Part shown: positions 17,501 through 64,000 of the stretch, piece after piece
Layout: every line of letters begins with the position of its first letter
Position numbering within the stretch: position 1 is the first letter of the stretch
NCBI GenBank assembly: GCA_964057225.1
Contig: OZ059897.1
Location: 6,634,001 to 6,698,000 of the forward strand
Reading direction: 5' to 3'
DNA from: Auanema rhodensis
Taxonomy: Eukaryota; Animalia; Nematoda
Length of the DNA stretch: 64,000 nucleotides
Program-made: the position numbers and the translations under genes
The notes under the pieces: model-generated
What the model saw: the letters and a program-made list of their open reading frames with translations, nothing else
What the model was told of the DNA's origin: nothing
Databases searched by the model: none

Positions 17501-18108
17501 TCAAAACTAGTTACTTACAATCATATAGTTGGCTCCTTTGTGTTCAATTTTTGGATAAGGCTTAGCTACTTGTGTGGCTTTGATCGCGTGAGCTATCTTC
17601 ATGTCGGCTAGACCAGCATCTCTGAAAAACATGTGACCATATGAAGAAGGTATAACTCTTCATGGATTTTCAAAAAATGTTCAACAAAATGAAATGTTTT
17701 TAATTATAAAATAGAAGATATACCTTCTGTAATTCATTGAGCGATTTATATGAGTATTTTCTGGTGAACTAGCTTCAGCTTTTAATGGGGCAAGATCATG
17801 AGGTCCGGCAATCGGAACGTGATTAGAGCAATAAACTTCCTGAAATTTCAAAGTTATACTTTGATACATTGAAGTTTATGATGAAAGAAATACCTTGTCA
17901 TTAATATCATTACGGTTATTACAGTATGTTTTCAATGCTAGACGAGTTCCACAGATATAACATTTGAAACAACCTGAAGATATGATAAAGCTTGAAGCTT
18001 TTGACAAAAATTCAAACCTTGATGAAAGAAAGTGGAATCTTTCAATGGACCAACTTTATCAGTTGGATAAACTTGTTTATTACATCTATTACAGTTAAGT
18101 TTAGTCAT
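14545..18108 (-). CDS. ltd-1: LIM and transglutaminase-like domain protein (hillarin orthologue), multi-exon
   Basis: MTKLNCNRCNKQVYPTDKVGPLKDSTFFHQGCFKCYICGTRLALKTYCNNRNDINDKEVYCSNHVP (LIM domain). TGase-like region DVARAIYRWIT...TESYHVLFKRLC, GFSKSAGYQPG, RNTWNAVYLDGSWRFVQCNWGARH, YEYDDHYFMTDP. Ends LLTHCCKYLIHSRNC* (TAA at 14545-14547). Confidence 0.93.
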
Positions 18109-29309: not shown

Positions 29310-30308
29310 AACTTATTTTAATTTAGTAAAAACAATATGCATATTAATGTCACGTAAACAGCCACGTGCAATCCACGTACATCACGCTGTATTACAAAAA
29401 TTGGAATAGAACATAATATGATGAATTATTTATAAAATTAATTATATAAAATTAATTTTATATATTATTATTAATATTATTTTTAATTTAAATATATTAT
29501 AAAATAATTTATATATGTATATGTGTATATATAATATATTTTATTTGAAAAACAAATGTGTATAGATATCACTAGACACATAAACCTTTAAAAGCTTATC
29601 ATCCTCCTATAAAGCTTTTTTTTTCTTCTTGTGAAATATGGTTAATAAAGATAAGTATTATTTGATATTTAATTATAAAAACAAATATTCATTTCAATCA
29701 CAATGTCTTCATGTAATTGATTTTTTTTTGAAATTTGAAAGCTTCATCAGTCTGCTTAAAAGATATTCAGAAGTGGATGTTCAGGAGCAATATTGAAACT
29801 GAGATATTCTTCTAAATCTAAGAAGTTTTTGCTTTAGTAAATATTTCTCAAAAATTTGAGTTTTTAGGATAAATTCAATCAATCAGTACTCATCAAATTT
29901 GTTCAATGAACACGTTTTTTTTTCAGTTTCTCATACTTTTTCGAAGAAGAACTGATGCAGCTGGTAGTACTTGCATGATAATCATTTTTGGAACAACACA
30001 TAAAATCTTAAAACATATTGATTGAATACCAAACTTTTGTATCAGGGAATCCCTGATAGTGATTTCGAAGTTGCTTCTCGCTAGACACATAAGTTAGCAT
30101 TTTGTTCACAAACTCTGAAAACGCATCGCTTGCAGCAGATTTTCTTCAAACGTATAGAAAAGCTTTTGATATGATTGTTATTTCTTGATATATAACATTA
30201 ATCCAAATACTCATTTAACAAAAAAAAAACGTTTTAAGAAGGAAAATTCTAAAAGATAAAGTCTGCATATTCCTTATTTCATCATTGATCTTTTGTCATT
30301 TCTCTCTA

Positions 30309-30487: not shown

Positions 30488-31482
30488 TTAGAAATCTTTA
30501 TTACAGGTAATTCCACATACATTGGCATTCTTGGAATACTGTACGACAATAACATCGTTAGCTGACCATCCACCAAATGGCTTGAAACTATTCTTATTTT
30601 GAGGAGCTTCACCAGTAATTGGGGCATTAGCCCACCTGTAAGAATAGAAAACTGAATGTTAATTATGATGCAGAAGTTACCATAACTGAAGATTTTCTTG
30701 ATTAAAACGGGCTTTATCAGCGTTTCCGGTAATCTGACTCCAATCATTTTCATTGGTATAGATAGTGCAAGTAAAATATTGCTGTAAGACAAGAAATAGA
30801 AAGCTGAGTTGAAACATTAATAGAAGTATTTACATTTGCGTTAGCAGCACTTATGATTTGCTTGATGAATTTGATATTCTTAGAAGTATCTTGATTCCAA
30901 TCTTGAGGATTTGTAACCTATAGGATAAAATGTATAATAGAAATAAAGAGAATCATAATTTACCCAAATTAATATATGATTACCATATAAACCACAGTTT
31001 TTCAATCCAGTATTCATGTCAACAAACTGTTCAAAACCACTTTTAGTTCCTTTTGGAGATGGTATCATGTAAATATCTGGTTGTATATTAGAATCTAAAA
31101 CAATATGTTTCAATTCAAAATTTCAACTTGTGAGATCAGACGAAGATGAACAATTGTATCTCTTGGAAATAAGGCTTACATGTCTTAGCAGATTTGTATG
31201 TATTACAAACATTCTTATCAAACATTCCATTGTTCATATTCATGTAAGCTCTGAAAACATGCTGATTGAATATAATAATTTAATATTAGGATATGCCTAA
31301 TGTATATTCTACTAGAGTTGTAACTTGTCGATAGACAGTTCAATTGAGCATCAGATACCGGTTGTTGAAAATCTATGATCTGAGATATAGAAAAATAAAG
31401 TGAAATGATTAGAAGTTGATCAGAATACCTGTGCTGTGGTTATGCCAAACAGTGCAATTCCGAGAAAGATACACAGTTTCAT
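30488..31482 (-). CDS. Secreted lysozyme-like protein (GH25-related nematode lys family, lys-1/2/7/8-like type)
   Basis: Signal peptide MKLCIFLGIALFGITTAQ. Then IIDFQQPVSDAQLNCL, YIRAYMNMNNGMFDKNVC, DIYMIPSPKGTKSGFEQF, ILIWVTNPQDW, NIKFIKQIISAA, TIYTNENDWSQIT, FKPFGGW and VQYSKNANVCGITCNKDF*, colinear with nematode LYS motifs. The model needs one GC-AG intron (31251-31296). Confidence 0.82.
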
Positions 31483-31847
31483 GTTTACGTACGAAATAGA
31501 AAAAGAAATGAGAGTTGCTCTCAAAATGACTCCTTATATTCTTCCTTTGAACTATTTTTCAAAAGATAAGCATCAAAGTTATCAGTGCCTCTCACCATCT
31601 CGCAATCTTTTCCTCTCCTTTTTTTCTTTATATGTCTTTCTCTTTCATCTCGTTATTCTCAATCTCTCTTTCTTTATATTCTTTAAAAATCTTACTCTGA
31701 TGATAGATAAGTTGTCGATTAATTGAAATAATCAGGATCTATGATTTACGTATTTTGATTCTTTAAGCTTTTAGAAAAATTTCATATATTTCTAGAAAAC
31801 CGTCATTTGTGATCAATAGATGATCGTACCAAGTACAGATGAGCAAG

Positions 31848-31871
31848 AAAAAGTTGAAGAAAACCTTAAAA
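31848..31871 (-). terminator. Pol III oligo-T terminators (T4, T4, T5) just 3' of the tRNA, present in each unit
   Basis: Minus strand after the discriminator reads TACC TTTT AAGG TTTT CTTCAAC TTTTT. Confidence 0.8.
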
Positions 31872-31875
31872 GGTA

Positions 31876-31999
31876 TGCACGGAGTGGGATTTGAACCCAC
31901 GCCCTCATACGAGGACCAGAACACCCAACTCTATACACAGAGTAAGAGATGATGAACAACTCTTGAGTCTGGCGCCTTAGACCACTCGGCCATCCGTGC
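31876..31999 (-). tRNA. tRNA-Leu(CAA) with 40-nt intron (31922-31961); first of 141 near-identical copies
   Basis: Minus strand: GCACGGA TG GCCGAGTGGTCTAAGGC G CCAGA CT CAA G [intron] T TCTGG TCCTCGTATGAGGGC GTGGG TTCAAAT CCCAC TCCGTGC A. It has a 7-bp acceptor stem, A and B boxes, a long variable arm, discriminator A, and the intron at the canonical 37/38 position. Confidence 0.97.
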
Positions 32000-34900
32000 T
32001 TCGAACACCGTCATTTGTGATCAATAGATGATCGTACCAAGTACAGATGAGCAAGAAAAAGTTGAAGAAAACCTTAAAAGGTATGCACGGAGTGGGATTT
32101 GAACCCACGCCCTCATACGAGGACCAGAACACCCAACTCTATACACAGAGTAAGAGATGATGAACAACTCTTGAGTCTGGCGCCTTAGACCACTCGGCCA
32201 TCCGTGCTTCGAACACCGTCATTTGTGATCAATAGATGATCGTACCAAGTACAGATGAGCAAGAAAAAGTTGAAAAAAACCTTAAAAGGTATGCACGGAG
32301 TGGGATTTGAACCCACGCCCTCATACGAGGACCAGAACACCCAACTCTATACACAGAGTAAGAGATGATGAACAACTCTTGAGTCTGGCGCCTTAGACCA
32401 CTCGGCCATCCGTGCTTCGAACACCGTCATTTGTGATCAATAGATGATCGTACCAAGTACAGATGAGCAAGAAAAAGTTGAAGAAAACCTTAAAAGGTAT
32501 GCACGGAGTGGGATTTGAACCCACGCCCTCATACGAGGACCAGAACACCCAACTCTATACACAGAGTAAGAGATGATGAACAACTCTTGAGTCTGGCGCC
32601 TTAGACCACTCGGCCATCCGTGCTTCGAACACCGTCATTTGTGATCAATAGATGATCGTACCAAGTACAGATGAGCAAGAAAAAGTTGAAGAAAACCTTA
32701 AAAGGTATGCACGGAGTGGGATTTGAACCCACGCCCTCATACGAGGACCAGAACACCCAACTCTATACACAGAGTAAGAGATGATGAACAACTCTTGAGT
32801 CTGGCGCCTTAGACCACTCGGCCATCCGTGCTTCGAACACCGTCATTTGTGATCAATAGATGATCGTACCAAGTACAGATGAGCAAGAAAAAGTTGAAGA
32901 AAACCTTAAAGGGTATGCACGGAGTGGGATTTGAACCCACGCCCTCATACGAGGACCAGAACACCCAACTCTATACACAGAGTAAGAGATGATGAACAAC
33001 TCTTGAGTCTGGCGCCTTAGACCACTCGGCCATCCGTGCTTCGAACACCGTCATTTGTGATCAATAGATGATCGTACCAAGTACAGATGAGCAAGAAAAA
33101 GTTGAAAAAAACCTTAAAAGGTATGCACGGAGTGGGATTTGAACCCACGCCCTCATACGAGGACCAGAACACCCAACTCTATACACAGAGTAAGAGATGA
33201 TGAACAACTCTTGAGTCTGGCGCCTTAGACCACTCGGCCATCCGTGCTTCGAACACCGTCATTTGTGATCAATAGATGATCGTACCAAGTACAGATGAGC
33301 AAGAAAAAGTTGAAAAAAACCTTAAAAGGTATGCACGGAGTGGGATTTGAACCCACGCCCTCATACGAGGACCAGAACACCCAACTCTATACACAGAGTA
33401 AGAGATGATGAACAACTCTTGAGTCTGGCGCCTTAGACCACTCGGCCATCCGTGCTTCGAACACCGTCATTTGTGATCAATAGATGATCGTACCAAGTAC
33501 AGATGAGCAAGAAAAAGTTGAAGAAAACCTTAAAAGGTATGCACGGAGTGGGATTTGAACCCACGCCCTCATACGAGGACCAGAACACCCAACTCTATAC
33601 ACAGAGTAAGAGATGATGAACAACTCTTGAGTCTGGCGCCTTAGACCACTCGGCCATCCGTGCTTCGAACACCGTCATTTGTGATCAATAGATGATCGTA
33701 CCAAGTACAGATGAGCAAGAAAAAGTTGAAAAAAACCTTAAAAGGTATGCACGGAGTGGGATTTGAACCCACGCCCTCATACGAGGACCAGAACACCCAA
33801 CTCTATACACAGAGTAAGAGATGATGAACAACTCTTGAGTCTGGCGCCTTAGACCACTCGGCCATCCGTGCTTCGAACACCGTCATTTGTGATCAATAGA
33901 TGATCGTACCAAGTACAGATGAGCAAGAAAAAGTTGAAGAAAACCTTAAAAGGTATGCACGGAGTGGGATTTGAACCCACGCCCTCATACGAGGACCAGA
34001 ACACCCAACTCTATACACAGAGTAAGAGATGATGAACAACTCTTGAGTCTGGCGCCTTAGACCACTCGGCCATCCGTGCTTCGAACACCGTCATTTGTGA
34101 TCAATAGATGATCGTACCAAGTACAGATGAGCAAGAAAAAGTTGAAGAAAACCTTAAAAGGTATGCACGGAGTGGGATTTGAACCCACGCCCTCATACGA
34201 GGACCAGAACACCCAACTCTATACACAGAGTAAGAGATGATGAACAACTCTTGAGTCTGGCGCCTTAGACCACTCGGCCATCCGTGCTTCGAACACCGTC
34301 ATTTGTGATCAATAGATGATCGTACCAAGTACAGATGAGCAAGAAAAAGTTGAAGAAAACCTTAAAGGGTATGCACGGAGTGGGATTTGAACCCACGCCC
34401 TCATACGAGGACCAGAACACCCAACTCTATACACAGAGTAAGAGATGATGAACAACTCTTGAGTCTGGCGCCTTAGACCACTCGGCCATCCGTGCTTCGA
34501 ACACCGTCATTTGTGATCAATAGATGATCGTACCAAGTACAGATGAGCAAGAAAAAGTTGAAAAAAACCTTAAAAGGTATGCACGGAGTGGGATTTGAAC
34601 CCACGCCCTCATACGAGGACCAGAACACCCAACTCTATACACAGAGTAAGAGATGATGAACAACTCTTGAGTCTGGCGCCTTAGACCACTCGGCCATCCG
34701 TGCTTCGAACACCGTCATTTGTGATCAATAGATGATCGTACCAAGTACAGATGAGCAAGAAAAAGTTGAAAAAAACCTTAAAAGGTATGCACGGAGTGGG
34801 ATTTGAACCCACGCCCTCATACGAGGACCAGAACACCCAACTCTATACACAGAGTAAGAGATGATGAACAACTCTTGAGTCTGGCGCCTTAGACCACTCG

Positions 34901-36451
34901 GCCATCCGTGCTTCGAACACCGTCATTTGTGATCAATAGATGATCGTACCAAGTACAGATGAGCAAGAAAAAGTTGAAGAAAACCTTAAAAGGTATGCAC
35001 GGAGTGGGATTTGAACCCACGCCCTCATACGAGGACCAGAACACCCAACTCTATACACAGAGTAAGAGATGATGAACAACTCTTGAGTCTGGCGCCTTAG
35101 ACCACTCGGCCATCCGTGCTTCGAACACCGTCATTTGTGATCAATAGATGATCGTACCAAGTACAGATGAGCAAGAAAAAGTTGAAGAAAACCTTAAAAG
35201 GTATGCACGGAGTGGGATTTGAACCCACGCCCTCATACGAGGACCAGAACACCCAACTCTATACACAGAGTAAGAGATGATGAACAACTCTTGAGTCTGG
35301 CGCCTTAGACCACTCGGCCATCCGTGCTTCGAACACCGTCATTTGTGATCAATAGATGATCGTACCAAGTACAGATGAGCAAGAAAAAGTTGAAGAAAAC
35401 CTTAAAGGGTATGCACGGAGTGGGATTTGAACCCACGCCCTCATACGAGGACCAGAACACCCAACTCTATACACAGAGTAAGAGATGATGAACAACTCTT
35501 GAGTCTGGCGCCTTAGACCACTCGGCCATCCGTGCTTCGAACACCGTCATTTGTGATCAATAGATGATCGTACCAAGTACAGATGAGCAAGAAAAAGTTG
35601 AAAAAAACCTTAAAAGGTATGCACGGAGTGGGATTTGAACCCACGCCCTCATACGAGGACCAGAACACCCAACTCTATACACAGAGTAAGAGATGATGAA
35701 CAACTCTTGAGTCTGGCGCCTTAGACCACTCGGCCATCCGTGCTTCGAACACCGTCATTTGTGATCAATAGATGATCGTACCAAGTACAGATGAGCAAGA
35801 AAAAGTTGAAGAAAACCTTAAAAGGTATGCACGGAGTGGGATTTGAACCCACGCCCTCATACGAGGACCAGAACACCCAACTCTATACACAGAGTAAGAG
35901 ATGATGAACAACTCTTGAGTCTGGCGCCTTAGACCACTCGGCCATCCGTGCTTCGAACACCGTCATTTGTGATCAATAGATGATCGTACCAAGTACAGAT
36001 GAGCAAGAAAAAGTTGAAGAAAACCTTAAAAGGTATGCACGGAGTGGGATTTGAACCCACGCCCTCATACGAGGACCAGAACACCCAACTCTATACACAG
36101 AGTAAGAGATGATGAACAACTCTTGAGTCTGGCGCCTTAGACCACTCGGCCATCCGTGCTTCGAACACCGTCATTTGTGATCAATAGATGATCGTACCAA
36201 GTACAGATGAGCAAGAAAAAGTTGAAGAAAACCTTAAAAGGTATGCACGGAGTGGGATTTGAACCCACGCCCTCATACGAGGACCAGAACACCCAACTCT
36301 ATACACAGAGTAAGAGATGATGAACAACTCTTGAGTCTGGCGCCTTAGATCACTCGGCCATCCGTGCTTCGAACACCGTCATTTGTGATCAATAGATGAT
36401 CGTACCAAGTACAGATGAGCAAGAAAAAGTTGAAGAAAACCTTAAAAGGTA

Positions 36452-36575
36452 TGCACGGAGTGGGATTTGAACCCACGCCCTCATACGAGGACCAGAACAC
36501 CCAACTCTATACACAGAGTAAGAGATGATGAACAACTCTTGAGTCTGGCGCCTTAGACCACTCGGCCATCCGTGC
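36452..36575 (-). tRNA. tRNA-Leu(CAA), intron-containing, last (23rd) copy of array 1
   Basis: Identical to the consensus copy. Confidence 0.95.
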
Positions 36576-36609
36576 TTCGAACACCGTCATTTGTGATCAA
36601 TAGATGATC

Positions 36610-39468
36610 ATTTTGAAAAAAAAGTTTAGAAGTTAAAATATGATGATTTAATTTTTTATTTATATTTGTTCTTGTTCTACTGCTGATCTCATCTTTCTGT
36701 CTTCGAAAAAGGTAATTGGCTTCCAAGTTTCCGTAAATAGCATTGATATGATCTGCCTAGCACATTTCTGATAATCTTCCAAGAATATTAAAACAACGAG
36801 AGGATTAATGATTGTGAATATTGATGGTAAGACCATCAGATAAGCAGTAACTTCAATTGGAAATGGAATTTGTAACCAACTACAAGCAATTGCCAGAAAT
36901 TGAGGACAAAACACCAAGGAAAATGGTAGAATAGTCTGAGTATGAAGGTTATAAGTGTAAGGAAAGAACGGAAAAAATAACACCTGTATGATGAGTAGCT
37001 TTAGAATTTTCCAATTTCGTTTGACTGCTGATGCCACTCGATGTTGGTTAAGTGTTCTCATAATAGCACAAGACGATATAATCATCGTAATAGTTACCAG
37101 AATCGCCAAAATAAAAATTGAAAATAATAATGAAGCTTTAACAACATTTCCTTCTAAAGCCTTAATTCATTTTACATTACATTTTACCATAAAAACTTGA
37201 TATAGATTCCTTACGGTAACTGAAAATGAGAAGAAAAATCGATTTTTAAGTGAATGATTCAGATAAGTTAGTACTAGTGGCTCTGCTTGCTCCACAGCTT
37301 TTTCATTAGGATGAACAACCATGATTACTGCTGTCATCCACATTGACACAAAAATTATATTGATAGCTAAACTGAGGACTATTCCAACAGGACTACATAG
37401 AAAAACATTCAGTTTTGGCCTGAAACAAGTTATGATTATTTCTGTTCTCTACTTTTTTCACTGGTTTACCTGCATATCACAGCGTATCTCAAGAAAAAAA
37501 TAAATCCCAAAAGACTAACTGTTGCAGCTTCGACGGCACACATGATATACATACAAGTGGCGGCCAAGACATTATTTATCATGAACGGTCCCTCAAATAT
37601 AAGAAACACTCCATCATCTCCAAATATATATATCTAGATAATAATATTTAAAATTACAAGTTTTTTCTAAATATTGAGGACTTTTGTACTTTTCTCTAGT
37701 TATATTTGTCTTTGTTTATATAAATAGTATGTACAAGATATGAAACTTCATATCTGTAGTTTATGATTTGTATTGAGAACTCTATATCGTCACATTTTGA
37801 TGAAACAACATACAATATCAATCAATATAATCGTTATTTTATTAAATAAATTCAAATAATAAATGAAAATACGAAACTTTCTCAATTGAACTATTTTTCT
37901 TAATTGTGTTATTAAATTATTTCATAAAAATTCGGAACTTCATTTAAGAATATTGAGGAATCATCTCGATCTTCCATTAATCTTTGTTGAATTTAACATA
38001 ATAATCTGTTATTTTTTATTTGAATTATGATTATTTGATTGAAAAATTCAAAATTTAGAATTAGGATTTATTTAATGAAGGTATACAAGCTAAAAATAGA
38101 CATGATATCAAAAATTCTGCCAATGATTTTGAGGTAGCTTGATGATAATAATACCTTTTGAAGTGATTTCTGGTTAATAGCAGTCACAAATATATATTAT
38201 TCATCAAATTCTTTAATTATTCATTTCAAAAAGTTAAATAATCTTATATGTTATAAATTGAAAAAGAATATATTTCATTTTAATCTATCTTATACTAATC
38301 CCTGGCTCTAGTTTCATATATAGATCAATTTATATTTCTATTTGATTAATATGAAATATAAAGAGAAAAAATGGTTGTTACTTGTTTTTTTTTGTTTTTT
38401 TTGTAATGGTTTTTGAGTCAAAAAAATTAAATCAATCACTGATATTAAATATAAAGAGCTACTTCAGAAGTTTTCAAAAGATTTGCTTTTACCGGTGTTT
38501 ACACATGTTTGCTAATTTTCAAAAATATTATTATTATCATTTCGGGCAAGGGCATATTCAACTATACATGTGTGCAATGACAATATTAAAATGAAAAATA
38601 TGAAGAAGATTGTGCAATAGGTTTCTGAAGTTTAAAAACTTACAACATTATCAAAACATAAGCCAAATACCAGAGTTATATCAAAGAAAGTATAGAAAAG
38701 TTGAAAAGCACGTTGTATTCTGTCGACAAAGTTTGATTTACATCTCAATTGTATAATAAATAAAAATATATTTAGTATAATAGAAATTATGAATAAAGCC
38801 AGTTGAACACGAAATACTTCGTCAGGATCGATCATGATCAGCCTTAAAACAGAATTAATTAGAAAAACAAAAAGAAATCAATTAACTAAAAGAGAAAATA
38901 TTTGAAATCATTCCTTAAAATTCAGCAACATGGCTTCATTAATTAATTTTCTAAATTAATTTCAATTTTTTTCAAACATTTCAAAGAAATAAAATAAAAT
39001 CTAAAAATGAAAGAATGTGCAGATTATTATCAAACTGGGAAAATATCAGAATCATTCCTTCCGCCTCTTCATGAAATATTTCAAAGTTTACATGATTAAC
39101 ATACATCATTCACACGTTTCGGTTCCTTTTTCTTTATTGGTGTGAACATTTGAAAGTCTATTTGAGAAAAAAACTTGGAGCTCAGTTAGCGGAAAATCAG
39201 GAAAATCTACGAAGACAACCACAATATGAAAGATTTTTCAAAAAGTTCAGAAATGTAAAGTTGGTTCTTCGAGAAACAAAACTGTTTAATTACAGTATAT
39301 ACGTGCATATAATACATATTATTTGACTATTTATATATTTATTAAATAATTTTTTAAATAAAATATGAGTATTAATTAACAATTCCATAGAATATCATGA
39401 ATATTTTTTCTCTAAAATGTAATTTTCGTTGAAATTTATGAACATTTTTTTCAATATTTTTTCTCGAA
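36610..39468. other. 2,859-bp unique insert interrupting the tRNA array, flanked by an 11-bp direct repeat
   Basis: AATAGATGATC occurs at 36599-36609 and 39469-39479. Removing the insert plus one copy of the 11-mer restores a perfect spacer. Confidence 0.85.
36660..38835 (-). CDS. Nematode 7TM chemoreceptor (Str/Srd/Srj superfamily), multi-exon with ~1-kb first intron
   Basis: Exon 1 MIDPDEVFRVQLALFIISIILNIFLFIIQ...FFDITLVFGLCFDNV|gtaagt. Exon 2 ...LIFEGPF...LLGFIFFLRYAVICR|P. Later motifs KILKLLIIQ/TILP and LPSIFTIINPLVVLIFLEDYQK. About seven hydrophobic segments. Confidence 0.85.
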
Positions 39469-39529
39469 AATAGATGATCGTACCAAGTACAGATGAGCAA
39501 GAAAAAGTTGAAGAAAACCTTAAAAGGTA

Positions 39530-39653
39530 TGCACGGAGTGGGATTTGAACCCACGCCCTCATACGAGGACCAGAACACCCAACTCTATACACAGAGTAAG
39601 AGATGATGAACAACTCTTGAGTCTGGCGCCTTAGACCACTCGGCCATCCGTGC
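39530..39653 (-). tRNA. tRNA-Leu(CAA), intron-containing, first copy of array 2
   Basis: Identical to the consensus copy. Confidence 0.95.
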
Positions 39654-40361
39654 TTCGAACACCGTCATTTGTGATCAATAGATAATCGTACCAAGTACAG
39701 ATGAGCAAGAAAAAGTTGAAGAAAACCTTAAAAGGTATGCACGGAGTGGGATTTGAACCCACGCCCTCATACGAGGACCAGAACACCCAACTCTATACAC
39801 AGAGTAAGAGATGATGAACAACTCTTGAGTCTGGCGCCTTAGACCACTCGGCCATCCGTGCTTCGAACACCGTCATTTGTGATCAATAGATGATCGTACC
39901 AAGTACAGATGAGCAAGAAAAAGTTGAAGAAAACCTTAAAAGGTATGCACGGAGTGGGATTTGAACCCACGCCCTCATACGAGGACCAGAACACCCAACT
40001 CTATACACAGAGTAAGAGATGATGAACAACTCTTGAGTCTGGCGCCTTAGACCACTCGGCCATCCCTGCTTCGAACACCGTCATTTGTGATCAATAGATG
40101 ATCGTACCAAGTACAGATGAGCAAGAAAAAGTTGAAGAAAACCTTAAAAGGTATGCACGGAGTGGGATTTGAACCCACGCCCTCATACGAGGACCAGAAC
40201 ACCCAACTCTATACACAGAGTAAGAGATGATGAACAACTCTTGAGTCTGGCGCCTTAGACCACTCGGCCATCCGTGCTTCGAACACCGTCATTTGTGATC
40301 AATAGATAATCGTACCAAGTACAGATGAGCAAGAAAAAGTTGAAGAAAACCTTAAAAGGTA

Positions 40362-40485
40362 TGCACGGAGTGGGATTTGAACCCACGCCCTCATACGAGG
40401 ACCAGAACACCCAACTCTATACACAGAGTAAGAGATGATGAACAACTCTTGAGTGTGGCGCCTTAGAGCACTCGGCCATCCATGC
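40362..40485 (-). pseudogene. Probable tRNA-Leu pseudogene copy (C4U, G19C, G30C); same haplotype at 41818-41941 and 42442-42565
   Basis: Plus strand gagtGtggcgccttagaGcactcggccatccAtgc. This breaks an anticodon-stem pair and the invariant D-loop GG. Confidence 0.65.
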
Positions 40486-43400
40486 TTCGAACACCGTCAT
40501 TTGTGATCAATAGATGATCGTACCAAGTACAGATGAGCAAGAAAAAGTTGAAGAAAACCTTAAAAGGTATGCACGGAGTGGGATTTGAACCCACGCCCTC
40601 ATACGAGGACCAGAACACCCAACTCTATACACAGAGTAAGAGATGATGAACAACTCTTGAGTCTGGGGCCTTAGACCACTCGGCCATCCGTGCTTCGAAC
40701 ACCGTCATTTGTGATCAATAGATAATCGTACCAAGTACAGATGAGCAAGAAAAAGTTGAAGAAAACCTTAAAAGGTATGCACGGAGTGGGATTTAAACCC
40801 ACGCCCTCATACGAGGACCAGAACACCCAACTCTATACACAGAGTAAGAGATGATGAACAACTCTTGAGTCTGGGGCCTTAGACCACTCGGCCATCCGTG
40901 CTTCGAACACCGTCATTTGTGATCAATAGATAATCGTACCAAGTACAGATGAGCAAGAAAAAGTTGAAGAAAACCTTAAAAGGTATGCACGGAGTGGGAT
41001 TTGAACCCACGCCCTCATACGAGGACCAGAACACCCAACTCTATGCACAGAGTAAGCGATGATGAACAACTCTTGAGTCTGGCGCCTTAGACCACTCGGC
41101 CATCCGTGCTTCGAACACCGTCATTTGTGATCACTAGATGATCGTACCAAGTACAGATGAGCAAGAAAAAGTTGAAGAAAACCTTAAAAGGTATGCACGG
41201 AGTGGGATTTGAACCCACGCCCTCATACGAGGACCAGAACACCCAACTCTATGCACAGAGTAAGAGATGATGAACAACTCTTGAGTCTGGCGCCTTAGAC
41301 CACTCGGCCATCCGTGCTTCGAACACCGTCATTTGTGATCACTAGATGATCGTACCAAGTACAGATGAGCAAGAAAAAGTTGAAGAAAACCTTAAAAGGT
41401 ATGCACGGAGTGGGATTTGAACCCACGCCCTCATACGAGGACCAGAACACCCAACTCTATACACAGAGTAAGAGATGATGAACAACTCTTGAGTCTGGCG
41501 CCTTAGACCACTCGGCCATCCGTGCTTCGAACACCGTCATTTGTGATCAATAGATGATCGTACCAAGTACAGATGAGCAAGAAAAAGTTGAAGAAAACCT
41601 TAAAAGGTATGCACGGAGTGGGATTTGAACCCACGCCCTCATACGAGGACCAGAACACCCAACTCTATGCACAGAGTAAGAGATGATGAACAACTCTTGA
41701 GTCTGGCGCCTTAGACCACTCGGCCATCCGTGCTTCGAACACCGTCATTTGTGATCACTAGATGATCGTACCAAGTACAGATGAGCAAGAAAAAGTTGAA
41801 GAAAACCTTAAAAGGTATGCACGGAGTGGGATTTGAACCCACGCCCTCATACGAGGACCAGAACACCCAACTCTATACACAGAGTAAGAGATGATGAACA
41901 ACTCTTGAGTGTGGCGCCTTAGAGCACTCGGCCATCCATGCTTCGAACACCGTCATTTGTGATCAATAGATGATCGTACCAAGTACAGATGAGCAAGAAA
42001 AAGTTGAAGAAAACCTTAAAAGGTATGCACGGAGTGGGATTTAAACCCACGCCCTCATACGAGGACCAGAACACCCAACTCTATACACAGAGTAAGAGAT
42101 GATGAACAACTCTTGAGTCTGGCGCCTTAGACCACTCGGCCATCCGTGCTTCGAACACCGTCATTTGTGATCAATAGATAATCGTACCAAGTACAGATGA
42201 GCAAGAAAAAGTTGAAGAAAACCTTAAAAGGTATGCACGGAGTGGGATTTGAACCCACGCCCTCATACGAGGACCAGAACACCCAACTCTATACACAGAG
42301 TAAGAGATGATGAACAACTCTTGAGTCTGGCGCCTTAGACCACTCGGCCCTCCGTGCTTCGAACACCGTCATTTGTGATCAATAGATAATCGTACCAAGT
42401 ACAGATGAGCAAGAAAAAGTTGAAGAAAACCTTAAAAGGTATGCACGGAGTGGGATTTGAACCCACGCCCTCATACGAGGACCAGAACACCCAACTCTAT
42501 ACACAGAGTAAGAGATGATGAACAACTCTTGAGTGTGGCGCCTTAGAGCACTCGGCCATCCATGCTTCGAACACCGTCATTTGTGATCAATAGATGATCG
42601 TACCAAGTACAGATGAGCAAGAAAAAGTTGAAGAAAACCTTAAAAGGTATGCACGGAGTGGGATTTAAACCCACGCCCTCATACGAGGACCAGAACACCC
42701 AACTCTATACACAGAGTAAGAGATGATGAACAACTCTTGAGTCTGGGGCCTTAGACCACTCGGCCATCCGTGCTTCGAACACCGTCATTTGTGATCAATA
42801 GATAATCGTACCAAGTACAGATGAGCAAGAAAAAGTTGAAGAAAACCTTAAAAGGTATGCACGGAGTGGGATTTGAACCCACGCCCTCATACGAGGACCA
42901 GAACACCCAACTCTATGCACAGAGTAAGAGATGATGAACAACTCTTGAGTCTGGCGCCTTAGACCACTCGGCCATCCGTGCTTCGAACACCGTCATTTGT
43001 GATCACTAGATGATCGTACCAAGTACAGATGAGCAAGAAAAAGTTGAAGAAAACCTTAAAAGGTATGCACGGAGTGGGATTTGAACCCACGCCCTCATAC
43101 GAGGACCAGAACACCCAACTCTATGCACAGAGTAAGAGATGATGAACAACTCTTGAGTCTGGCGCCTTAGACCACTCGGCCATCCGTGCTTCGAACACCG
43201 TCATTTGTGATCACTAGATGATCGAACCAAGTACAGATGAGCAAGAAAAAGTTGAAGAAAACCTTAAAAGGTATGCACGGAGTGGGATTTGAACCCACGC
43301 CCTCATACGAGGACCAGAACACCCAACTCTATGCACAGAGTAAGAGATGATGAACAACTCTTGAGTCTGGCGCCTTAGACCACTCGGCCATCCGTGCTTC

Positions 43401-46400
43401 GAACACCGTCATTTGTGATCACTAGATGATCGTACCAAGTACAGATGAGCAAGAAAAAGTTGAAGAAAACCTTAAAAGGTATGCACGGAGTGGGATTTGA
43501 ACCCACGCCCTCATACGAGGACCAGAACACCCAACTCTATACACAGAGTAAGAGATGATGAACAACTCTTGAGTCTGGCGCCTTAGACCACTCGGCCATC
43601 CGTGCTTCGAACACCGTCATTTGTGATCAATAGATGATCGTACCAAGTACAGATGAGCAAGAAAAAGTTGAAGAAAACCTTAAAAGGTATGCACGGAGTG
43701 GGATTTGAACCCACGCCCTCATACGAGGACCAGAACACCCAACTCTATACACAGAGTAAGAGATGATGAACAACTCTTGAGTCTGGCGCCTTAGACCACT
43801 CGGCCATCCGTGCTTCGAACACCGTCATTTGTGATCAATAGATGATCGTACCAAGTACAGATGAGCAAGAAAAAGTTGAAGAAAACCTTAAAAGGTATGC
43901 ACGGAGTGGGATTTGAACCCACGCCCTCATACGAGGACCAGAACACCCAACTCTATACACAGAGTAAGAGATGATGAACAACTCTTGAGTCTGGCGCCTT
44001 AGACCACTCGGCCATCCGTGCTTCGAACACCGTCATTTGTGATCAATAGATGATCGTACCAAGTACAGATGAGCAAGAAAAAGTTGAAGAAAACCTTAAA
44101 AGGTATGCACGGAGTGGGATTTGAACCCACGCCCTCATACGAGGACCAGAACACCCAACTCTATACACAGAGTAAGAGATGATGAACAACTCTTGAGTCT
44201 GGCGCCTTAGACCACTCGGCCATCCGTGCTTCGAACACCGTCATTTGTGATCAATAGATGATCGTACCAAGTACAGATGAGCAAGAAAAAGTTGAAGAAA
44301 ACCTTAAAAGGTATGCACGGAGTGGGATTTGAACCCACGCCCTCATACGAGGACCAGAACACCCAACTCTATACACAGAGTAAGAGATGATGAACAACTC
44401 TTGAGTCTGGCGCCTTAGAGCACTCGGCCATCCGTGCTTCGAACACCGTCATTTGTGATCAATAGATGATCGTACCAAGTACAGATGAGCAAGAAAAAGT
44501 TGAAGAAAACCTTAAAAGGTATGCACGGAGTGGGATTTGAACCCACGCCCTCATACGAGGACCAGAACACCCAACTCTATACACAGAGTAAGAGATGATG
44601 AACAACTCTTGAGTCTGGCGCCTTAGACCACTCGGCCATCCGTGCTTCGAACACCGTCATTTGTGATCAATAGATAATCGTACCAAGTACAGATGAGCAA
44701 GAAAAAGTTGAAGAAAACCTTAAAAGGTATGCACGGAGTGGGATTTGAACCCACGCCCTCATACGAGGACCAGAACACCCAACTCTATACACAGAGTAAG
44801 AGATGATGAACAACTCTTGAGTCTGGCGCCTTAGAGCACTCGGCCATCCGTGCTTCGAACACCGTCATTTGTGATCAATAGATGATCGTACCAAGTACAG
44901 ATGAGCAAGAAAAAGTTGAAGAAAACCTTAAAAGGTATGCACGGAGTGGGATTTGAACCCACGCCCTCATACGAGGACCAGAACACCCAACTCTATACAC
45001 AGAGTAAGAGATGATGAACAACTCTTGAGTCTGGCGCCTTAGACCACTCGGCCATCCGTGCTTCGAACACCGTCATTTGTGATCAATAGATGATCGTACC
45101 AAGTACAGATGAGCAAGAAAAAGTTGAAGAAAACCTTAAAAGGTATGCACGGAGTGGGATTTGAACCCACGCCCTCATACGAGGACCAGAACACCCAACT
45201 CTATACACAGAGTAAGAGATGATGAACAACTCTTGAGTCTGGCGCCTTAGACCACTCGGCCATCCGTGCTTCGAACACCGTCATTTGTGATCAATAGATG
45301 ATCGTACCAAGTACAGATGAGCAAGAAAAAGTTGAAGAAAACCTTAAAAGGTATGCACGGAGTGGGATTTGAACCCACGCCCTCATACGAGGACCAGAAC
45401 ACCCAACTCTATACACAGAGTAAGAGATGATGAACAACTCTTGAGTCTGGCGCCTTAGACCACTCGGCCATCCGTGCTTCGAACACCGTCATTTGTGATC
45501 AATAGATGATCGTACCAAGTACAGATGAGCAAGAAAAAGTTGAAGAAAACCTTAAAAGGTATGCACGGAGTGGGATTTGAACCCACGCCCTCATACGAGG
45601 ACCAGAACACCCAACTCTATACACAGAGTAAGAGATGATGAACAACTCTTGAGTCTGGCGCCTTAGACCACTCGGCCATCCGTGCTTCGAACACCGTCAT
45701 TTGTGATCAATAGATGATCGTACCAAGTACAGATGAGCAAGAAAAAGTTGAAGAAAACCTTAAAAGGTATGCACGGAGTGGGATTTGAACCCACGCCCTC
45801 ATACGAGGACCAGAACACCCAACTCTATACACAGAGTAAGAGATGATGAACAACTCTTGAGTCTGGCGCCTTAGACCACTCGGCCATCCGTGCTTCGAAC
45901 ACCGTCATTTGTGATCAATAGATAATCGTACCAAGTACAGATGAGCAAGAAAAAGTTGAAGAAAACCTTAAAAGGTATGCACGGAGTGGGATTTAAACCC
46001 ACGCCCTCATACGAGGACCAGAACACCCAACTCTATACACAGAGTAAGAGATGATGAACAACTCTTGAGTCTGGCGCCTTAGACCACTCGGCCATCCGTG
46101 CTTCGAACACCGTCATTTGTGATCAATAGATAATCGTACCAAGTACAGATGAGCAAGAAAAAGTTGAAAAAAACCTTAAAAGGTATGCACGGAGTGGGAT
46201 TTGAACCCACGCCCTCATACGAGGACCAGAACACCCAACTCTATGCACAGAGTAAGAGATGATGAACAACTCTTGAGTCTGGCGCCTTAGACCACTCGGC
46301 CATCCGTGCTTCGAACACCGTCATTTGTGATCACTAGATGATCGTACCAAGTACAGATGAGCAAGAAAAAGTTGAAGAAAACCTTAAAAGGTATGCACGG

Positions 46401-49400
46401 AGTGGGATTTGAACCCACGCCCTCATACGAGGACCAGAACACCCAACTCTATACACAGAGTAAGAGATGATGAACAACTCTTGAGTCTGGCGCCTTAGAC
46501 CACTCGGCCATCCGTGCTTCGAACACCGTCATTTGTGATCAATAGATAATCGTACCAAGTACAGATGAGCAAGAAAAAGTTGAAGAAAACCTTAAAAGGT
46601 ATGCACGGAGTGGGATTTGAACCCACGCCCTCATACGAGGACCAGAACACCCAACTCTATGCACAGAGTAAGAGATGATGAACAACTCTTGAGTCTGGCG
46701 CCTTAGACCACTCGGCCATCCGTGCTTCGAACACCGTCATTTGTGATCAATAGATGATCGTACCAAGTACAGATGAGCAAGAAAAAGTTGAAGAAAACCT
46801 TAAAAGGTATGCACGGAGTGGGATTTGAACCCACGCCCTCATACGAGGACCAGAACACCCAACTCTATGCACAGAGTAAGAGATGATGAACAACTCTTGA
46901 GTCTGGCGCCTTAGACCACTCGGCCATCCGTGCTTCGAACACCGTCATTTGTGATCACTAGATGATCGTACCAAGTACAGATGAGCAAGAAAAAGTTGAA
47001 GAAAACCTTAAAAGGTATGCACGGAGTGGGATTTGAACCCACGCCCTCATACGAGGACCAGAACACCCAACTCTATACACAGAGTAAGAGATGATGAACA
47101 ACTCTTGAGTCTGGCGCCTTAGACCACTCGGCCATCCGTGCTTCGAACACCGTCATTTGTGATCAATAGATGATCGTACCAAGTACAGATGAGCAAGAAA
47201 AAGTTGAAGAAAACCTTAAAAGGTATGCACGGAGTGGGATTTGAACCCACGCCCTCATACGAGGACCAGAACACCCAACTCTATACACAGAGTAAGAGAT
47301 GATGAACAACTCTTGAGTCTGGCGCCTTAGACCACTCGGCCATCCGTGCTTCGAACACCGTCATTTGTGATCAATAGATAATCGTACCAAGTACAGATGA
47401 GCAAGAAAAAGTTGAAGAAAACCTTAAAAGGTATGCACGGAGTGGGATTTAAACCCACGCCCTCATACGAGGACCAGAACACCCAACTCTATACACAGAG
47501 TAAGAGATGATGAACAACTCTTGAGTCTGGCGCCTTAGACCACTCGGCCATCCGTGCTTCGAACACCGTCATTTGTGATCAATAGATAATCGTACCAAGT
47601 ACAGATGAGCAAGAAAAAGTTGAAGAAAACCTTAAAAGGTATGCACGGAGTGGGATTTGAACCCACGCCCTCATACGAGGACCAGAACACCCAACTCTAT
47701 GCACAGAGTAAGAGATGATGAACAACTCTTGAGTCTGGCGCCTTAGACCACTCGGCCATCCGTGCTTCGAACACCGTCATTTGTGATCAATAGATGATCG
47801 TACCAAGTACAGATGAGCAAGAAAAAGTTGAAGAAAACCTTAAAAGGTATGCACGGAGTGGGATTTGAACCCACGCCCTCATACGAGGACCAGAACACCC
47901 AACTCTATGCACAGAGTAAGAGATGATGAACAACTCTTGAGTCTGGCGCCTTAGACCACTCGGCCATCCGTGCTTCGAACACCGTCATTTGTGATCACTA
48001 GATGATCGTACCAAGTACAGATGAGCAAGAAAAAGTTGAAGAAAACCTTAAAAGGTATGCACGGAGTGGGATTTGAACCCACGCCCTCATACGAGGACCA
48101 GAACACCCAACTCTATACACAGAGTAAGAGATGATGAACAACTCTTGAGTCTGGCGCCTTAGACCACTCGGCCATCCGTGCTTCGAACACCGTCATTTGT
48201 GATCAATAGATAATCGTACCAAGTACAGATGAGCAAGAAAAAGTTGAAGAAAACCTTAAAAGGTATGCACGGAGTGGGATTTAAACCCACGCCCTCATAC
48301 GAGGACCAGAACACCCAACTCTATACACAGAGTAAGAGATGATGAACAACTCTTGAGTCTGGCGCCTTAGACCACTCGGCCATCCGTGCTTCGAACACCG
48401 TCATTTGTGATCAATAGATAATCGTACCAAGTACAGATGAGCAAGAAAAAGTTGAAAAAAACCTTAAAAGGTATGCACGGAGTGGGATTTGAACCCACAC
48501 CCTCATACGAGGACCAGAACACCCAACTCTATGCACAGAGTAAGAGATGATGAACAACTCTTGAGTCTGGCGCCTTAGACCACTCGGCCATCCGTGCTTC
48601 GAACACCGTCATTTGTGATCACTAGATGATCGTACCAAGTACAGATGAGCAAGAAAAAGTTGAAGAAAACCTTAAAAGGTATGCACGGAGTGGGATTTGA
48701 ACCCACGCCCTCATACGAGGACCAGAACACCCAACTCTATACACAGAGTAAGAGATGATGAACAACTCTTGAGTCTGGCGCCTTAGACCACTCGGCCATC
48801 CGTGCTTCGAACACCGTCATTTGTGATCAATAGATGATCGTACCAAGTACAGATGAGCAAGAAAAAGTTGAAGAAAACCTTAAAAGGTATGCACGGAGTG
48901 GGATTTGAACCCACGCCCTCATACGAGGACCAGAACACCCAACTCTATACACAGAGTAAGAGATGATGAACAACTCTTGAGTCTGGCGCCTTAGACCACT
49001 CGGCCATCCGTGCTTCGAACACCGTCATTTGTGATCAATAGATGATCGTACCAAGTACAGATGAGCAAGAAAAAGTTGAAGAAAACCTTAAAAGGTATGC
49101 ACGGAGTGGGATTTGAACCCACGCCCTCATACGAGGACCAGAACACCCAACTCTATACACAGAGTAAGAGATGATGAACAACTCTTGAGTCTGGCGCCTT
49201 AGACCACTCGGCCATCCGTGCTTCGAACACCGTCATTTGTGATCAATAGATGATCGTACCAAGTACAGATGAGCAAGAAAAAGTTGAAGAAAACCTTAAA
49301 AGGTGTGCACGGAGTGGGATTTGAACCCACGCCCTCATACGAGGACCAGAACACCCAACTCTAAACACAGAGTAAGAGATGATGAACAACTCTTGAGTCT

Positions 49401-52400
49401 GGCGCCTTAGACCATTCGGCCATCCGTGCTTCGAACACCGTCATTTGTGATCAATAGATAATCGTACCAAGTACAGATGAGCAAGAAAAAGTTGAAAAAA
49501 ACCTTAAAAGGTATGCACGGAGTGGGATTTGAACCCACGCCCTCATACGAGGACCAGAACACCCAACTCTATACACAGAGTAAGAGATGATGAACAACTC
49601 TTGAGTCTGGCGCCTTAGACCACTCGGCCATCCGTGCTTCGAACACGTCATTTGTGATCAATAGATAATCGTACCAAGTACAGATGAGCAAGAAAAAGTT
49701 GAAGAAAACCTTAAAAGGTATGCACGGAGTGGGATTTGAACCCACGCCCTCATACGAGGACCAGAACACCCAACTCTATACACAGAGTAAGAGATGATGA
49801 ACAACTCTTGAGTCTGGCGCCTTAGACCACTCGGCCATCCGTGCTTCGAACACCGTCATTTGTGATCAATAGATGATCGTACCAAGTACAGATGAGCAAG
49901 AAAAAGTTGAAGAAAACCTTAAAAGGTATGCACGGAGTGGGATTTGAACCCACGCCCTCATACGAGGACCAGAACACCCAACTCTATACACAGAATAAGA
50001 GATGATGAACAACTCTTGAGTCTGGCGCCTTAGAGCACTCGGCCATCCGTGTTTCAAACACCTTCATTTGTGATCAATAGATGATCGTACCAAGTACAGA
50101 TGAGCAAGAAAAAGTTGAAGAAAACCTTAAAAGGTATGCACGGAGTGGGATTTGAACCCACGCCCTCATACGAGGACCAGAACACCCAACTCTATGCACA
50201 GAGTAAGAGATGATGAACAACTCTTGAGTCTGGCGCCTTAGACCACTCGGCCATCCGTGCTTCGAACACCGTCATTTGTGATCAATAGATGATCGTACCA
50301 AGTACAGATGAGCAAGAAAAAGTTGAAGAAAACCTTAAAAGGTATGCACGGAGTGGGATTTGAACCCACGCCCTCATACGAGGACCAGAACACCCAACTC
50401 TATACACAGAGTAAGAGATGATGAACAACTCTTGAGTCTGGCGCCTTAGACCACTCGGCCATCCGTGCTTCGAACACCGTCATTTGTGATCAATAGATGA
50501 TCGTACCAAGTACAGATGAGCAAGAAAAAGTTGAAGAAAACCTTAAAAGGTATGCACGGAGTGGGATTTGAACCCACGCCCTCATACGAGGACCAGAACA
50601 CCCAACTCTATACACAGAGTAAGAGATGATGAACAACTCTTGAGTCTGGCGCCTTAGACCACTCGGCCATCCGTGCTTCGAACACCGTCATTTGTGATCA
50701 ATAGATGATCGTACCAAGTACAGATGAGCAAGAAAAAGTTGAAGAAAACCTTAAAAGGTATGCACGGAGTGGCATTTGAACCCACGCCCTCATACGAGGA
50801 CCAGAACACCCAACTCTATACACAGAGTAAGAGATGATGAACAACTCTTGAGTCTGGCGCCTTAGACCACTCGGCCATCCGTGCTTCGAACACCGTCATT
50901 TGTGATCAATAGATGATCGTACCAAGTACAGATGAGCAAGAAAAAGTTGAAGAAAACCTTAAAAGGTATGCACGGAGTGGGATTTGAACCCACGCCCTCA
51001 TACGAGGACCAGAACACCCAACTCTATACACAGAGTAAGAGATGATGAACAACTCTTGAGTCTGGCGCCTTAGACCACTCGGCCATCCGTGCTTCGAACA
51101 CCGTCATTTGTGATCAATAGATGATCGTACCAAGTACAGATGAGCAAGAAAAAGTTGAAGAAAACCTTAAAAGGTATGCACGGAGTGGGATTTGAACCCA
51201 CGCCCTCATACGAGGACCAGAACACCCAACTCTATACACAGAGTAAGAGATGATGAACAACTCTTGAGTCTGGCGCCTTAGACCACTCGGCCATCCGTGC
51301 TTCGAACACCGTCATTTGTGATCAATAGATGATCGTACCAAGTACAGATGAGCAAGAAAAAGTTGAAGAAAACCTTAAAAGTTATGCACGGAGTGGGATT
51401 TGAACCCACGCCCTCATACGAGGACCAGAACACCCAACTCTATACACAGAGTAAGAGATGATGAACAACTCTTGAGTCTGGCGCCTTAGACCACTCGGCC
51501 ATCCGTGCTTCGAACACCGTCATTTGTGATCAATAGATGATCGTACGAAGTACAGATGAGCAAGAAAAAGTTGAAGAAAACCTTAAAAGGTATGCACGGA
51601 GTGGGATTTGAACCCACGCCCTCATACGAGTACCAGAACACCCAACTCTATACACAGAGTAAGAGATGATGAACAACTCTTGAGTCTGGCGCCTTAGAGC
51701 ACTCGGCCATCCGTGTTTCGAACACCTTCATTTGTGATCAATAGATGATCGTACCAAGTACAGATGAGCAAGAAAAAGTTGAAGAAAACCTTAAAAGGTA
51801 TGCACGGAGTGGGATTTGAACCCACGCCCTCATACGAGGACCAGAACACCCAACTCTATACACAGAGTAAGAGATGATGAACAACTCTTGAGTCTGGCGC
51901 CTTAGACCACTCGGCCATCCGTGCTTCGAACACCGTCATTTGTGATCACTAGATGATCGTACCAAGTACAGATGAGCAAGAAAAAGTTGAAGAAAACCTT
52001 AAAAGGTATGCACGGAGTGGGATTTGAACCCACGCCCTCATACGAGGACCAGAACACCCAACTCTATACACAGAGTAAGAGATGATGAACAACTCTTGAG
52101 TCTGGCGCCTTAGACCACTCGGCCATCCGTGCTTCGAACACCTTCATTTGTGATCAATAGATGATCGTACCAAGTACAGATGAGCAAGAAAAAGTTGAAG
52201 AAAACCTTAAAAGTTATGCACGGAGTGGGATTTGAACCCACGCCCTCATACGAGGACCAGAACACCCAACTCTATACACAGAGTAAGAGATGATGAACAA
52301 CTCTTGAGTCTGGCGCCTTAGAGCACTCGGCCATCCGTGCTTCGAACACCGTCATTTGTGATCAATAGATGATCGTACCAAGTACAGATGAGCAAGAAAA

Positions 52401-63864: not shown

Positions 63865-63988
63865 TGCACGGAGTGGGATTTGAACCCACGCCCTCATACG
63901 AGGACCAGAACACCCAACTCTATACACAGAGTAAGAGATGATGAACAACTCTTGAGTCTGGCGCCTTAGACCACTCGGCCATCCGTGC
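63865..63988 (-). tRNA. tRNA-Leu(CAA), intron-containing, last complete copy in window
   Basis: Identical to the consensus copy. Confidence 0.95.
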
Positions 63989-64000
63989 TTCGAACACCGT

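What the first reader, a model, noticed from the sequence alone, without database searches (positions are those of the whole stretch)
36599..39479. A whole chemoreceptor gene sits inside the tRNA array, flanked by an 11-bp target-site-like duplication
Seen: array 1 ends ...TGTGATC-AATAGATGATC|ATTTTG and array 2 resumes TTCTCGAA|AATAGATGATC-GTACC. The 2,859-bp segment therefore interrupts a single spacer in perfect register. It holds exactly one gene: the stop codon is 50 bp from the left junction with an overlapping AATAAA, and there are 633 bp upstream of the ATG. Introns are retained, so it is not a retrocopy. No transposase or convincing TIRs are visible. Known: 9-11 bp TSDs typify Mutator-like elements, which can capture host genes. 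Inference: either DNA-level gene capture or insertion at a staggered cut, or integration of a circular gene+tRNA intermediate whose 11-bp microhomology also defined the 208-bp unit. Either would be a route for chemoreceptor mobility or insulation via tRNA arrays.
Basis: partly seen in the sequence, partly recalled or inferred. Interest (0 to 1): 0.85.

Follow-up and report, generated by a model that had tools for sequence, protein, structure and literature searches.

The report
Chemoreceptor gene trapped inside tRNA array
An intact worm chemoreceptor gene really does sit in the middle of a long string of identical leucine-tRNA genes, but it is more likely an old resident that the string grew out of and around than a gene that jumped in, and the sequence alone cannot settle which.

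Summary
Observation confirmed. A 2,859-bp unique segment holding one intact four-exon Str/Srd-type chemoreceptor gene (353 aa) splits a 208-bp tRNA-Leu(CAA) array (23 units left, 118+ right), in register, between two exact copies of AATAGATGATC. The genome is probably Auanema rhodense.

The 11-bp repeat does not give direction. Insertion with a target-site duplication and deletion of the gene between two pre-existing 11-mers leave identical sequence. A model in which a 3,078-bp gene+tRNA block was duplicated, lost the gene between the 11-mers and left the 208-bp unit rebuilds 8.8 kb with only 13 unit-level mismatches. The left array has none of the four variants carried by 49% of right-array units, so the split is about as old as the array. 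Such 11-bp repeats arise by chance in about 12% of comparable stretches.

A weak 25-bp subterminal inverted repeat (P about 0.008, post hoc) keeps a Pack-MULE-like insertion alive (about 0.3). I obtained no paralogue, outgroup or reads; the run finder was closed. Unchecked scan notes report a similar chemoreceptor inside a 5S array on other DNA of this genome.

The parts
31799..36609 (-). Array 1: 23 tRNA-Leu(CAA) units of 208 bp plus 27 bp; low diversity (pi 0.37%), private variants 34G>A, 46A>G, 157C>T
31795..31825 (+). Outer left edge of array 1: GAA.A match to the tRNA 5' flank, then the 27-bp segment 's' ending in the 11-mer
31876..31999 (-). First tRNA-Leu(CAA) gene with intron (one per unit)
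   Evidence: (RF00005, 51.9 bits)
36599..36609 (+). Left copy of AATAGATGATC, 24-34 bp upstream of the tRNA 5' end
36610..39468 (.). Unique 2,859-bp segment (G)
36610..36634 (+). Left arm of a 25-bp imperfect inverted repeat (20/25), flush with the segment start
   Evidence: (I7)
36655..36660 (-). AATAAA overlapping the last base of the stop codon
36660..37160 (-). Chemoreceptor exon 4 (with stop)
37215..37419 (-). Chemoreceptor exon 3
   Evidence: frame only; no informative family hit
37470..37633 (-). Chemoreceptor exon 2
38644..38835 (-). Chemoreceptor exon 1 (ATG at 38835); 1,010-bp intron 1 follows
38836..39468 (-). 633-bp upstream (promoter) region
39433..39457 (-). Right arm of the 25-bp imperfect inverted repeat, ending 11 bp inside the segment
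39400..39471 (+). 19-bp local direct repeat (39400-39418 and 39453-39471, 18/19) whose second copy runs 3 bases into the right 11-mer
   Evidence: (D14)
39469..39479 (+). Right copy of AATAGATGATC, 50-61 bp downstream of the next tRNA's 3' end
39469..64000 (-). Array 2: at least 118 units, pi 1.0%, common variants 110A>G, 157C>G, 199A>C, 205G>A; runs off the window
30491..31481 (-). Neighbouring lysozyme-like gene; its start is 316 bp from the array edge

Best explanation
The chemoreceptor is a resident gene, and the array was born from it. Inferred ancestor: lysozyme promoter side (X) - 27-bp segment s ending in AATAGATGATC - chemoreceptor (G) - a second AATAGATGATC (m) - one tRNA-Leu gene with its trailer (t). 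Step 1 (inferred): tandem duplication of the 3,078-bp block s-G-m-t, joined at a 3-4-bp GAA.A microhomology that is still visible at the array's left edge. Step 2 (inferred): homology-mediated deletion between the two 11-mers in one copy removes G and leaves the 208-bp unit t+s. Step 3 (inferred, routine): unequal exchange amplifies the 208-bp unit on both sides of the one surviving G. Shown: the present structure X-s-(t-s)x23-G-m-(t-s)n follows exactly from these pieces. Consequence: the gene now lies between 99%-identical direct repeats and should be lost or duplicated often by unequal exchange, so it should vary in copy number or be held by selection.
For: Reconstruction from window pieces gives 13 mismatches in 8,803 bp, in line with unit-level variants. 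Array 1 has 0 of 23 units with any of the four variants found in 49% of array-2 units; every 23-unit window of array 2 has at least 4 such units, and the longest clean run is 13. Differentiation across the gene (Fst 0.16-0.17) exceeds every cut inside array 2 for 15- and 23-unit blocks. So the split predates most array-2 variation, which fits presence from the start. Exact repeats of 11 bp or more are common in this AT-rich DNA: 8 inside the segment, a median of 7 per 3,078 bp, and 12% of windows hold one spanning 2.5 kb or more. Removing array 1 leaves an ordinary 393-bp gap between chemoreceptor stop and lysozyme start. A whole gene with promoter and polyA site is what a resident gene looks like. 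A 19-bp local repeat runs 3 bases into the right 11-mer, as expected if there is no junction there (weak, about 5% by chance). Microhomology-joined tandem duplications and deletions guided by extended microhomology are documented in C. elegans (PMC8654963; tested repeats there were about 20-30 bp). Unchecked scan notes describe both steps elsewhere in this genome: protein-gene + Pol III amplicons (s1-401420, s1-407083) and array units shrinking between short direct repeats (s1-401452).
Against: Direction is not proven, because insertion with an 11-bp duplication gives the same sequence and passes the same reconstruction. No outgroup or paralogue was obtained. The model needs a suitable pre-existing 11-bp repeat (about 12%). 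The variant pattern also fits an insertion into a very young array, and for 10-unit blocks the Fst test is not exceptional (13% of cuts reach it). The subterminal inverted repeat (P about 0.008) is unexplained by this model.
Confidence: 0.45

Rival explanations
1. True insertion with a target-site duplication into the young array. A non-autonomous DNA element (Pack-MULE-like, with short decayed inverted ends) or a repair patch at a staggered break carried the whole gene in, upstream of a tRNA gene. The duplication could be 11 bp, or 8 bp (AGATGATC) plus 3 bp of shared sequence.
For: Crisp exact 11-bp repeat with no extended homology beyond it. A 20/25 inverted match starts exactly at the segment's first base, P about 0.008 against composition-matched windows, and it is the only such match in the window. 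With an 8-bp duplication the ends become ATTTT...AAAAT, 14/20. The site lies at -24 to -34 of a tRNA, where Pol III initiation factors bind (own knowledge). Nematode Mutator/Foldback elements make 8-10-bp duplications (PMC3169594), and an animal Pack-MULE exists (Ssk-FB4, PMC8277862). Unchecked scan notes report a Pol III-seeking Mutator family in this genome (s1-401422, s1-387507) and a second chemoreceptor in a 5S array (s1-419479).
Against: No flush TIR (9/15). The right arm ends 11 bp inside, and both arms are low-complexity A-runs found post hoc among 242 inverted pairs. No transposase remnant. Known Pack-MULEs have long TIRs (about 700 bp in Ssk-FB4). The insertion must have hit the array when it was still nearly uniform, a small target. 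No donor was found, but the genome could not be searched.
Confidence: 0.3
2. A 3,078-bp circle (gene + one tRNA unit), excised here or at another locus, integrated into the array by homologous recombination in the tRNA unit.
For: The interrupted unit is exactly gene + 208 + 11 = 3,078 bp and in register; homologous integration leaves no scar.
Against: It needs the same gene-tRNA linkage as the best model plus an extra step. No donor locus is known. A late integration would leave shared variants on both sides, which is not seen.
Confidence: 0.12
3. Two pieces of array landed or grew independently on either side of a resident gene, and the 11-bp overlap is a coincidence.
For: Different variant spectra on the two sides; unchecked notes of arrays landing inside genes (s1-378766).
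Against: The chance of same strand and 0-15 bp overlap is about 4%, although a genome-wide scan selects such cases.
Confidence: 0.08
4. Assembly error joining unique DNA into a collapsed array.
For: Near-identical 208-bp repeats; no reads could be examined.
Against: Array 1 is only 4.8 kb and has its own ordered variants. The probable source assembly is PacBio HiFi with a 16.4-Mb contig N50. An exact 11-bp duplication is not a usual misjoin scar.
Confidence: 0.05

Closest known systems
Tandem tRNA gene arrays of Auanema rhodense (bioRxiv 10.64898/2026.08.27.747507)
   Same: Head-to-tail arrays of Pol III genes; 19,554 tRNA loci are reported.
   Different: The preprint does not mention GPCRs or chemoreceptors and describes no protein gene inside an array and no route of array birth.
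Pack-MULE / Pack-TIR elements (Ssk-FB4; PMC8277862) and nematode Tm1 Mutator/Foldback elements (PMC3169594)
   Same: Intron-containing host DNA between 8-11-bp direct repeats, with no coding transposase.
   Different: No long or flush TIRs; a whole gene with promoter fills the entire segment; no second copy with a different duplication is shown.
Microhomology-joined tandem duplication and deletion (TMEJ, HELQ-dependent eMMEJ and SSA in C. elegans; PMC8654963)
   Same: A junction with 3-4 bp of shared sequence and a deletion between short direct repeats explain all three junctions.
   Different: Inferred from sequence only; the tested repeats in that paper were about 20-30 bp, longer than 11 bp.
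Dada transposons and tRNA-targeting retroelements (Ty3, TRE5; own knowledge)
   Same: Insertion site at a fixed place near a tRNA gene.
   Different: Dada makes 6-7-bp duplications inside the gene and codes a transposase. Retroelements carry LTRs or polyA tails and lose introns. None of this is seen here.
Str/Srd superfamily nematode chemoreceptors
   Same: About 350 aa, seven or so hydrophobic segments, colinear Str profile matches.
   Different: Very diverged: no relative at E<=0.001 among 1.84 billion representatives for exon 4; family within the superfamily unresolved.

Membership tests
Pack-MULE | 8-11-bp target-site duplication | tested here: inconclusive
   Exact 11-bp direct repeat present, but whether it arose by duplication or pre-existed cannot be told without an outgroup
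Pack-MULE | Terminal inverted repeats flush with the duplication, usually long | tested here: not met
   9/15 and 14/25 flush identity; only a 20/25 match offset by 11 bp; best alternative is 5 flush bases with an 8-bp duplication
Pack-MULE | Ends shared with a MULE family in the genome | not testable with these tools
   Genome beyond the window not searchable; one match only in the window
Pack-MULE | Parental copy of the captured gene elsewhere | not testable with these tools
   None in the window; database searches blank
Retrocopy / TPRT insertion | Intron loss and polyA tail | tested here: not met
   Three introns and 633 bp of upstream DNA retained; no tail at either junction
Helitron capture | 5' TC, 3' CTRR, no duplication | tested here: not met
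   Ends read ATTTTG...CTCGAA with an 11-bp repeat
Dada transposon | Transposase, 6-7-bp duplication inside the small-RNA gene | tested here: not met
   Site is 24-34 bp upstream of the tRNA, no transposase frame; family features from own knowledge
Str/Srd superfamily chemoreceptor | Profile match to a serpentine 7TM family | tested here: met
   Exon 2 to Str 62-112 and exon 4 to Str 241-305 at the same offset (14.3 and 16.2 bits, each below the 22.4 cut-off alone); Atlas 0.93 and 0.89
Str/Srd superfamily chemoreceptor | Expression and splicing as modelled | not testable with these tools
Tandem tRNA gene array | Head-to-tail units each with a complete tRNA gene | tested here: met
Amplicon relic (resident gene) | Same gene order without the array in a relative | tested here: inconclusive
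   Tried through the neighbouring hillarin gene; no Auanema locus or protein was identified among the hits

The most novel reading that the evidence does not exclude
A Pol III-seeking Mutator-type transposase moved a complete, working chemoreceptor gene, with promoter and introns and only short decayed inverted ends, into a tRNA array. The same route also put a chemoreceptor into a 5S array, so Pol III arrays act as landing pads for receptor genes in this nematode.
Probability: 0.18. Interest if true: 0.75.

Novelty: new variant of a known kind. Interest (0 to 1): 0.42.

Why it matters
If the best reading holds, this locus records how a tRNA satellite is born: duplicate a protein gene with its neighbouring tRNA, lose the protein gene between short repeats, then amplify what is left. 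That is a testable route for the origin of the very large tRNA arrays of Auanema. It also predicts a chemoreceptor with unstable copy number, because it lies between 99%-identical direct repeats. If the insertion reading holds instead, it would be whole-gene movement of a chemoreceptor into Pol III arrays, for which my paper searches found no report. It is one locus, direction is unresolved, and no effect on the worm is shown.

Tried and rejected
ARAGORN found no tRNA (intron-containing genes); Rfam did. Homologue searches with exon 4 were blank, both length-limited and against 1.84 billion representatives. The last lysozyme exon was blank. The array spacer is absent from metagenome contigs. 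The spliced model was searched exon by exon, by reference. The exons were joined only inside a script, to check frame, hydropathy and composition and for one local comparison with the window's own left half; the joined protein was sent to no database search or fold. Homology between the lysozyme-side edge and the gene's upstream edge was considered and not supported (P 0.03-0.05 at about 40 bp, absent at 100-400 bp). Retrocopy, Helitron and Dada were rejected on defining features. A late insertion into the mature array was rejected on variant sharing. The preprint's supplements are not held, so soma-retained status was not checked.

Full report
What is there. The window holds two arrays of a 208-bp unit, 31795-36609 (23 copies) and 39469 to the window end (118 copies). 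Each unit carries one intron-containing tRNA gene on the minus strand (Rfam RF00005, 51.9 bits) with anticodon CAA. Cutting the arrays at a fixed anchor gives 138 units of 208 bp, one of 207 and one of 3,078. The long unit is 208 + 2,859 + 11 bp: the unique segment 36610-39468 lies between two exact copies of AATAGATGATC. The segment holds one gene on the minus strand, with four exons, GT-AG introns of 1,010, 50 and 54 bp, and 353 codons without a stop. The stop lies 50 bp from the left junction with an overlapping AATAAA, and 633 bp lie upstream of the ATG. Exons 2 and 4 match the Pfam Str profile at the same offset, and exons 4 and 1 fall nearest Str/Srd/Srh clusters in the Atlas. It is a diverged Str-superfamily chemoreceptor; exon 4 finds no relative among 1.84 billion representatives. 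The third intron's acceptor (ATTAAG) was chosen to keep the frame and is not read-supported.

Organism. Earlier scan notes name Auanema rhodense. The 2026 preprint on that species reports 19,554 tRNA loci, tandem tRNA and 5S arrays, and a HiFi assembly with a 16.4-Mb contig N50 (10.64898/2026.08.27.747507). It does not mention chemoreceptors. I did not confirm the species independently. The array lies in gene-rich DNA: a lysozyme-like gene starts 316 bp to the left, hillarin lies at 14.5-18.2 kb, and a note places a unique gene about 17.5 kb beyond the window.

The two sides are linked, but direction is open. Two independent landings in the same orientation with 0-15 bp of overlap have a chance of about 4%, so one linked history is likely. 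The same sequence results if the two 11-mers pre-existed and the gene was deleted between them. The left edge of array 1 helps define the pieces: it reads ...CTAGAAA|ACCGTC against the unit's ...TTCGAAC|ACCGTC, a GAA.A match just upstream of the tRNA, followed by a 27-bp segment s that ends in the 11-mer. An ancestor X-s-G-m-t (G the gene, m the right 11-mer, t the 181-bp trailer + tRNA), duplicated as the 3,078-bp block s-G-m-t and then losing G between the 11-mers, gives the 208-bp unit t+s. Rebuilding X-(s-t)x23-s-G-m-t-(s-t)x3 from these pieces matches the window with 13 mismatches in 8,803 bp. This shows that the model is sufficient, not that it happened; the insertion model passes the same test.

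Internal evidence on timing. Array 1 has pi 0.37% and three variant sites; array 2 has pi 1.0% and 32 variants. Four variants (110A>G, 157C>G, 199A>C, 205G>A) mark 49% of array-2 units and none of the 23 array-1 units. Every 23-unit window of array 2 has at least four such units. Differentiation across the gene exceeds all cuts within array 2 for 15- and 23-unit blocks, though not for 10-unit blocks. A late insertion into a mature array would leave shared variants on both sides. The gene was therefore in place at or near the array's birth, or array 1 grew from a single consensus-type unit beside it. That is expected of a resident gene and demands a small target of an insertion.

How surprising is the 11-mer? 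Exact repeats of 11 bp or more number 8 inside the segment and a median of 7 per 3,078 bp of unique DNA here; 12% of such windows hold one spanning 2.5 kb or more. Removing array 1 leaves 393 bp between the receptor's stop and the lysozyme start, an ordinary gap. A 19-bp local repeat in the promoter region runs three bases into the right 11-mer, a weak sign that no junction lies there, or that any duplication is 8 bp. Duplications joined at tiny microhomologies and deletions guided by longer ones are documented in C. elegans (PMC8654963), though with repeats of about 20-30 bp.

Evidence for insertion. The first 25 bp of the segment match, inverted, a stretch that ends 11 bp inside the right end (20/25). 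Against composition-matched windows this has P about 0.008, and it is the only such match in the window. It was found post hoc in A-rich DNA, and flush ends match poorly (9/15). With an 8-bp duplication the ends read ATTTT...AAAAT. Nematode Mutator/Foldback elements make 8-10-bp duplications (PMC3169594), and the Drosophila Pack-MULE Ssk-FB4 has 9-10-bp duplications but TIRs of about 700 bp (PMC8277862). Unchecked notes report a Mutator family that lands in Pol III genes in this genome. The segment fails Pack-MULE membership on TIRs, but a decayed or atypical element is not excluded.

Parallels in the scan, all unchecked by me: a chemoreceptor in a 5S array between 30-bp repeats (s1-419479), 5S units that shrink between 29-bp repeats (s1-401452), and protein-gene amplicons carrying Pol III passengers (s1-401420, s1-407083). 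They give precedent for both steps of the resident model and prompted me to weigh it more; they are leads, not support.

What could not be done. No paralogue or Auanema outgroup was reached. The spliced model was searched exon by exon by reference, and the joined search step was left out. The joined sequence was used only inside scripts, for frame, hydropathy, composition and a local comparison with the window. Insulation by tRNA genes was not tested.

Verdict. The structure is real and neat. I put the resident-gene, pop-out origin at 0.45, insertion with a true duplication at 0.30, circle integration at 0.12, independent landings at 0.08 and misassembly at 0.05. It is a new variant of known things (tRNA arrays, microhomology-driven rearrangement), useful as a possible record of how these arrays begin. 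Interest 0.42.

Noticed in passing
window 31826-36401: Array 1 shows a short higher-order pattern (46A>G followed by 34G>A in units 5-6, 12-13 and 17-18). The same pair recurs once in array 2 (units at 56743 and 56951), hinting at exchange across the gene or a shared ancestor.
   Followed up: partly
window 55079-60070: Array 2 has repeated 4-5-unit blocks (50A>G; 117/157/174/185; 110/199; 47G>T) at about 55.3, 58.2 and 59.2 kb.
   Followed up: no
window 31790-31799, 39461-39470 and unit phase 175-180: The two unique flanks on the left of each array end in TTCnnGAA (TTCTAGAA, TTCTCGAA; heat-shock-element-like), and the tRNA 5' flank has TTCGAA; the flank similarity is only borderline (P 0.03-0.05).
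   Followed up: partly
window 14500-18250, minus strand: Hillarin gene (LIM + transglutaminase-like), exons 40-84% identical to animal relatives.
   Followed up: partly
window 345-2583, minus strand: Exons resembling a receptor guanylyl cyclase (from the translation only).
   Followed up: no
window 12725-13264, plus strand: Exons resembling an amino-acid transporter (from the translation only).
   Followed up: no
window 29900-30200: A short stretch with coding-like composition and 45-55-codon stop-free frames on both strands; not identified.
   Followed up: no
window 40312-63800: Many array-2 variants (144C>G, 148C>G, 157C>G, 171G>A, 174C>T, 68G>A) fall inside the mature tRNA, so a share of copies may be impaired, whereas array 1 has only one such change.
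   Followed up: no
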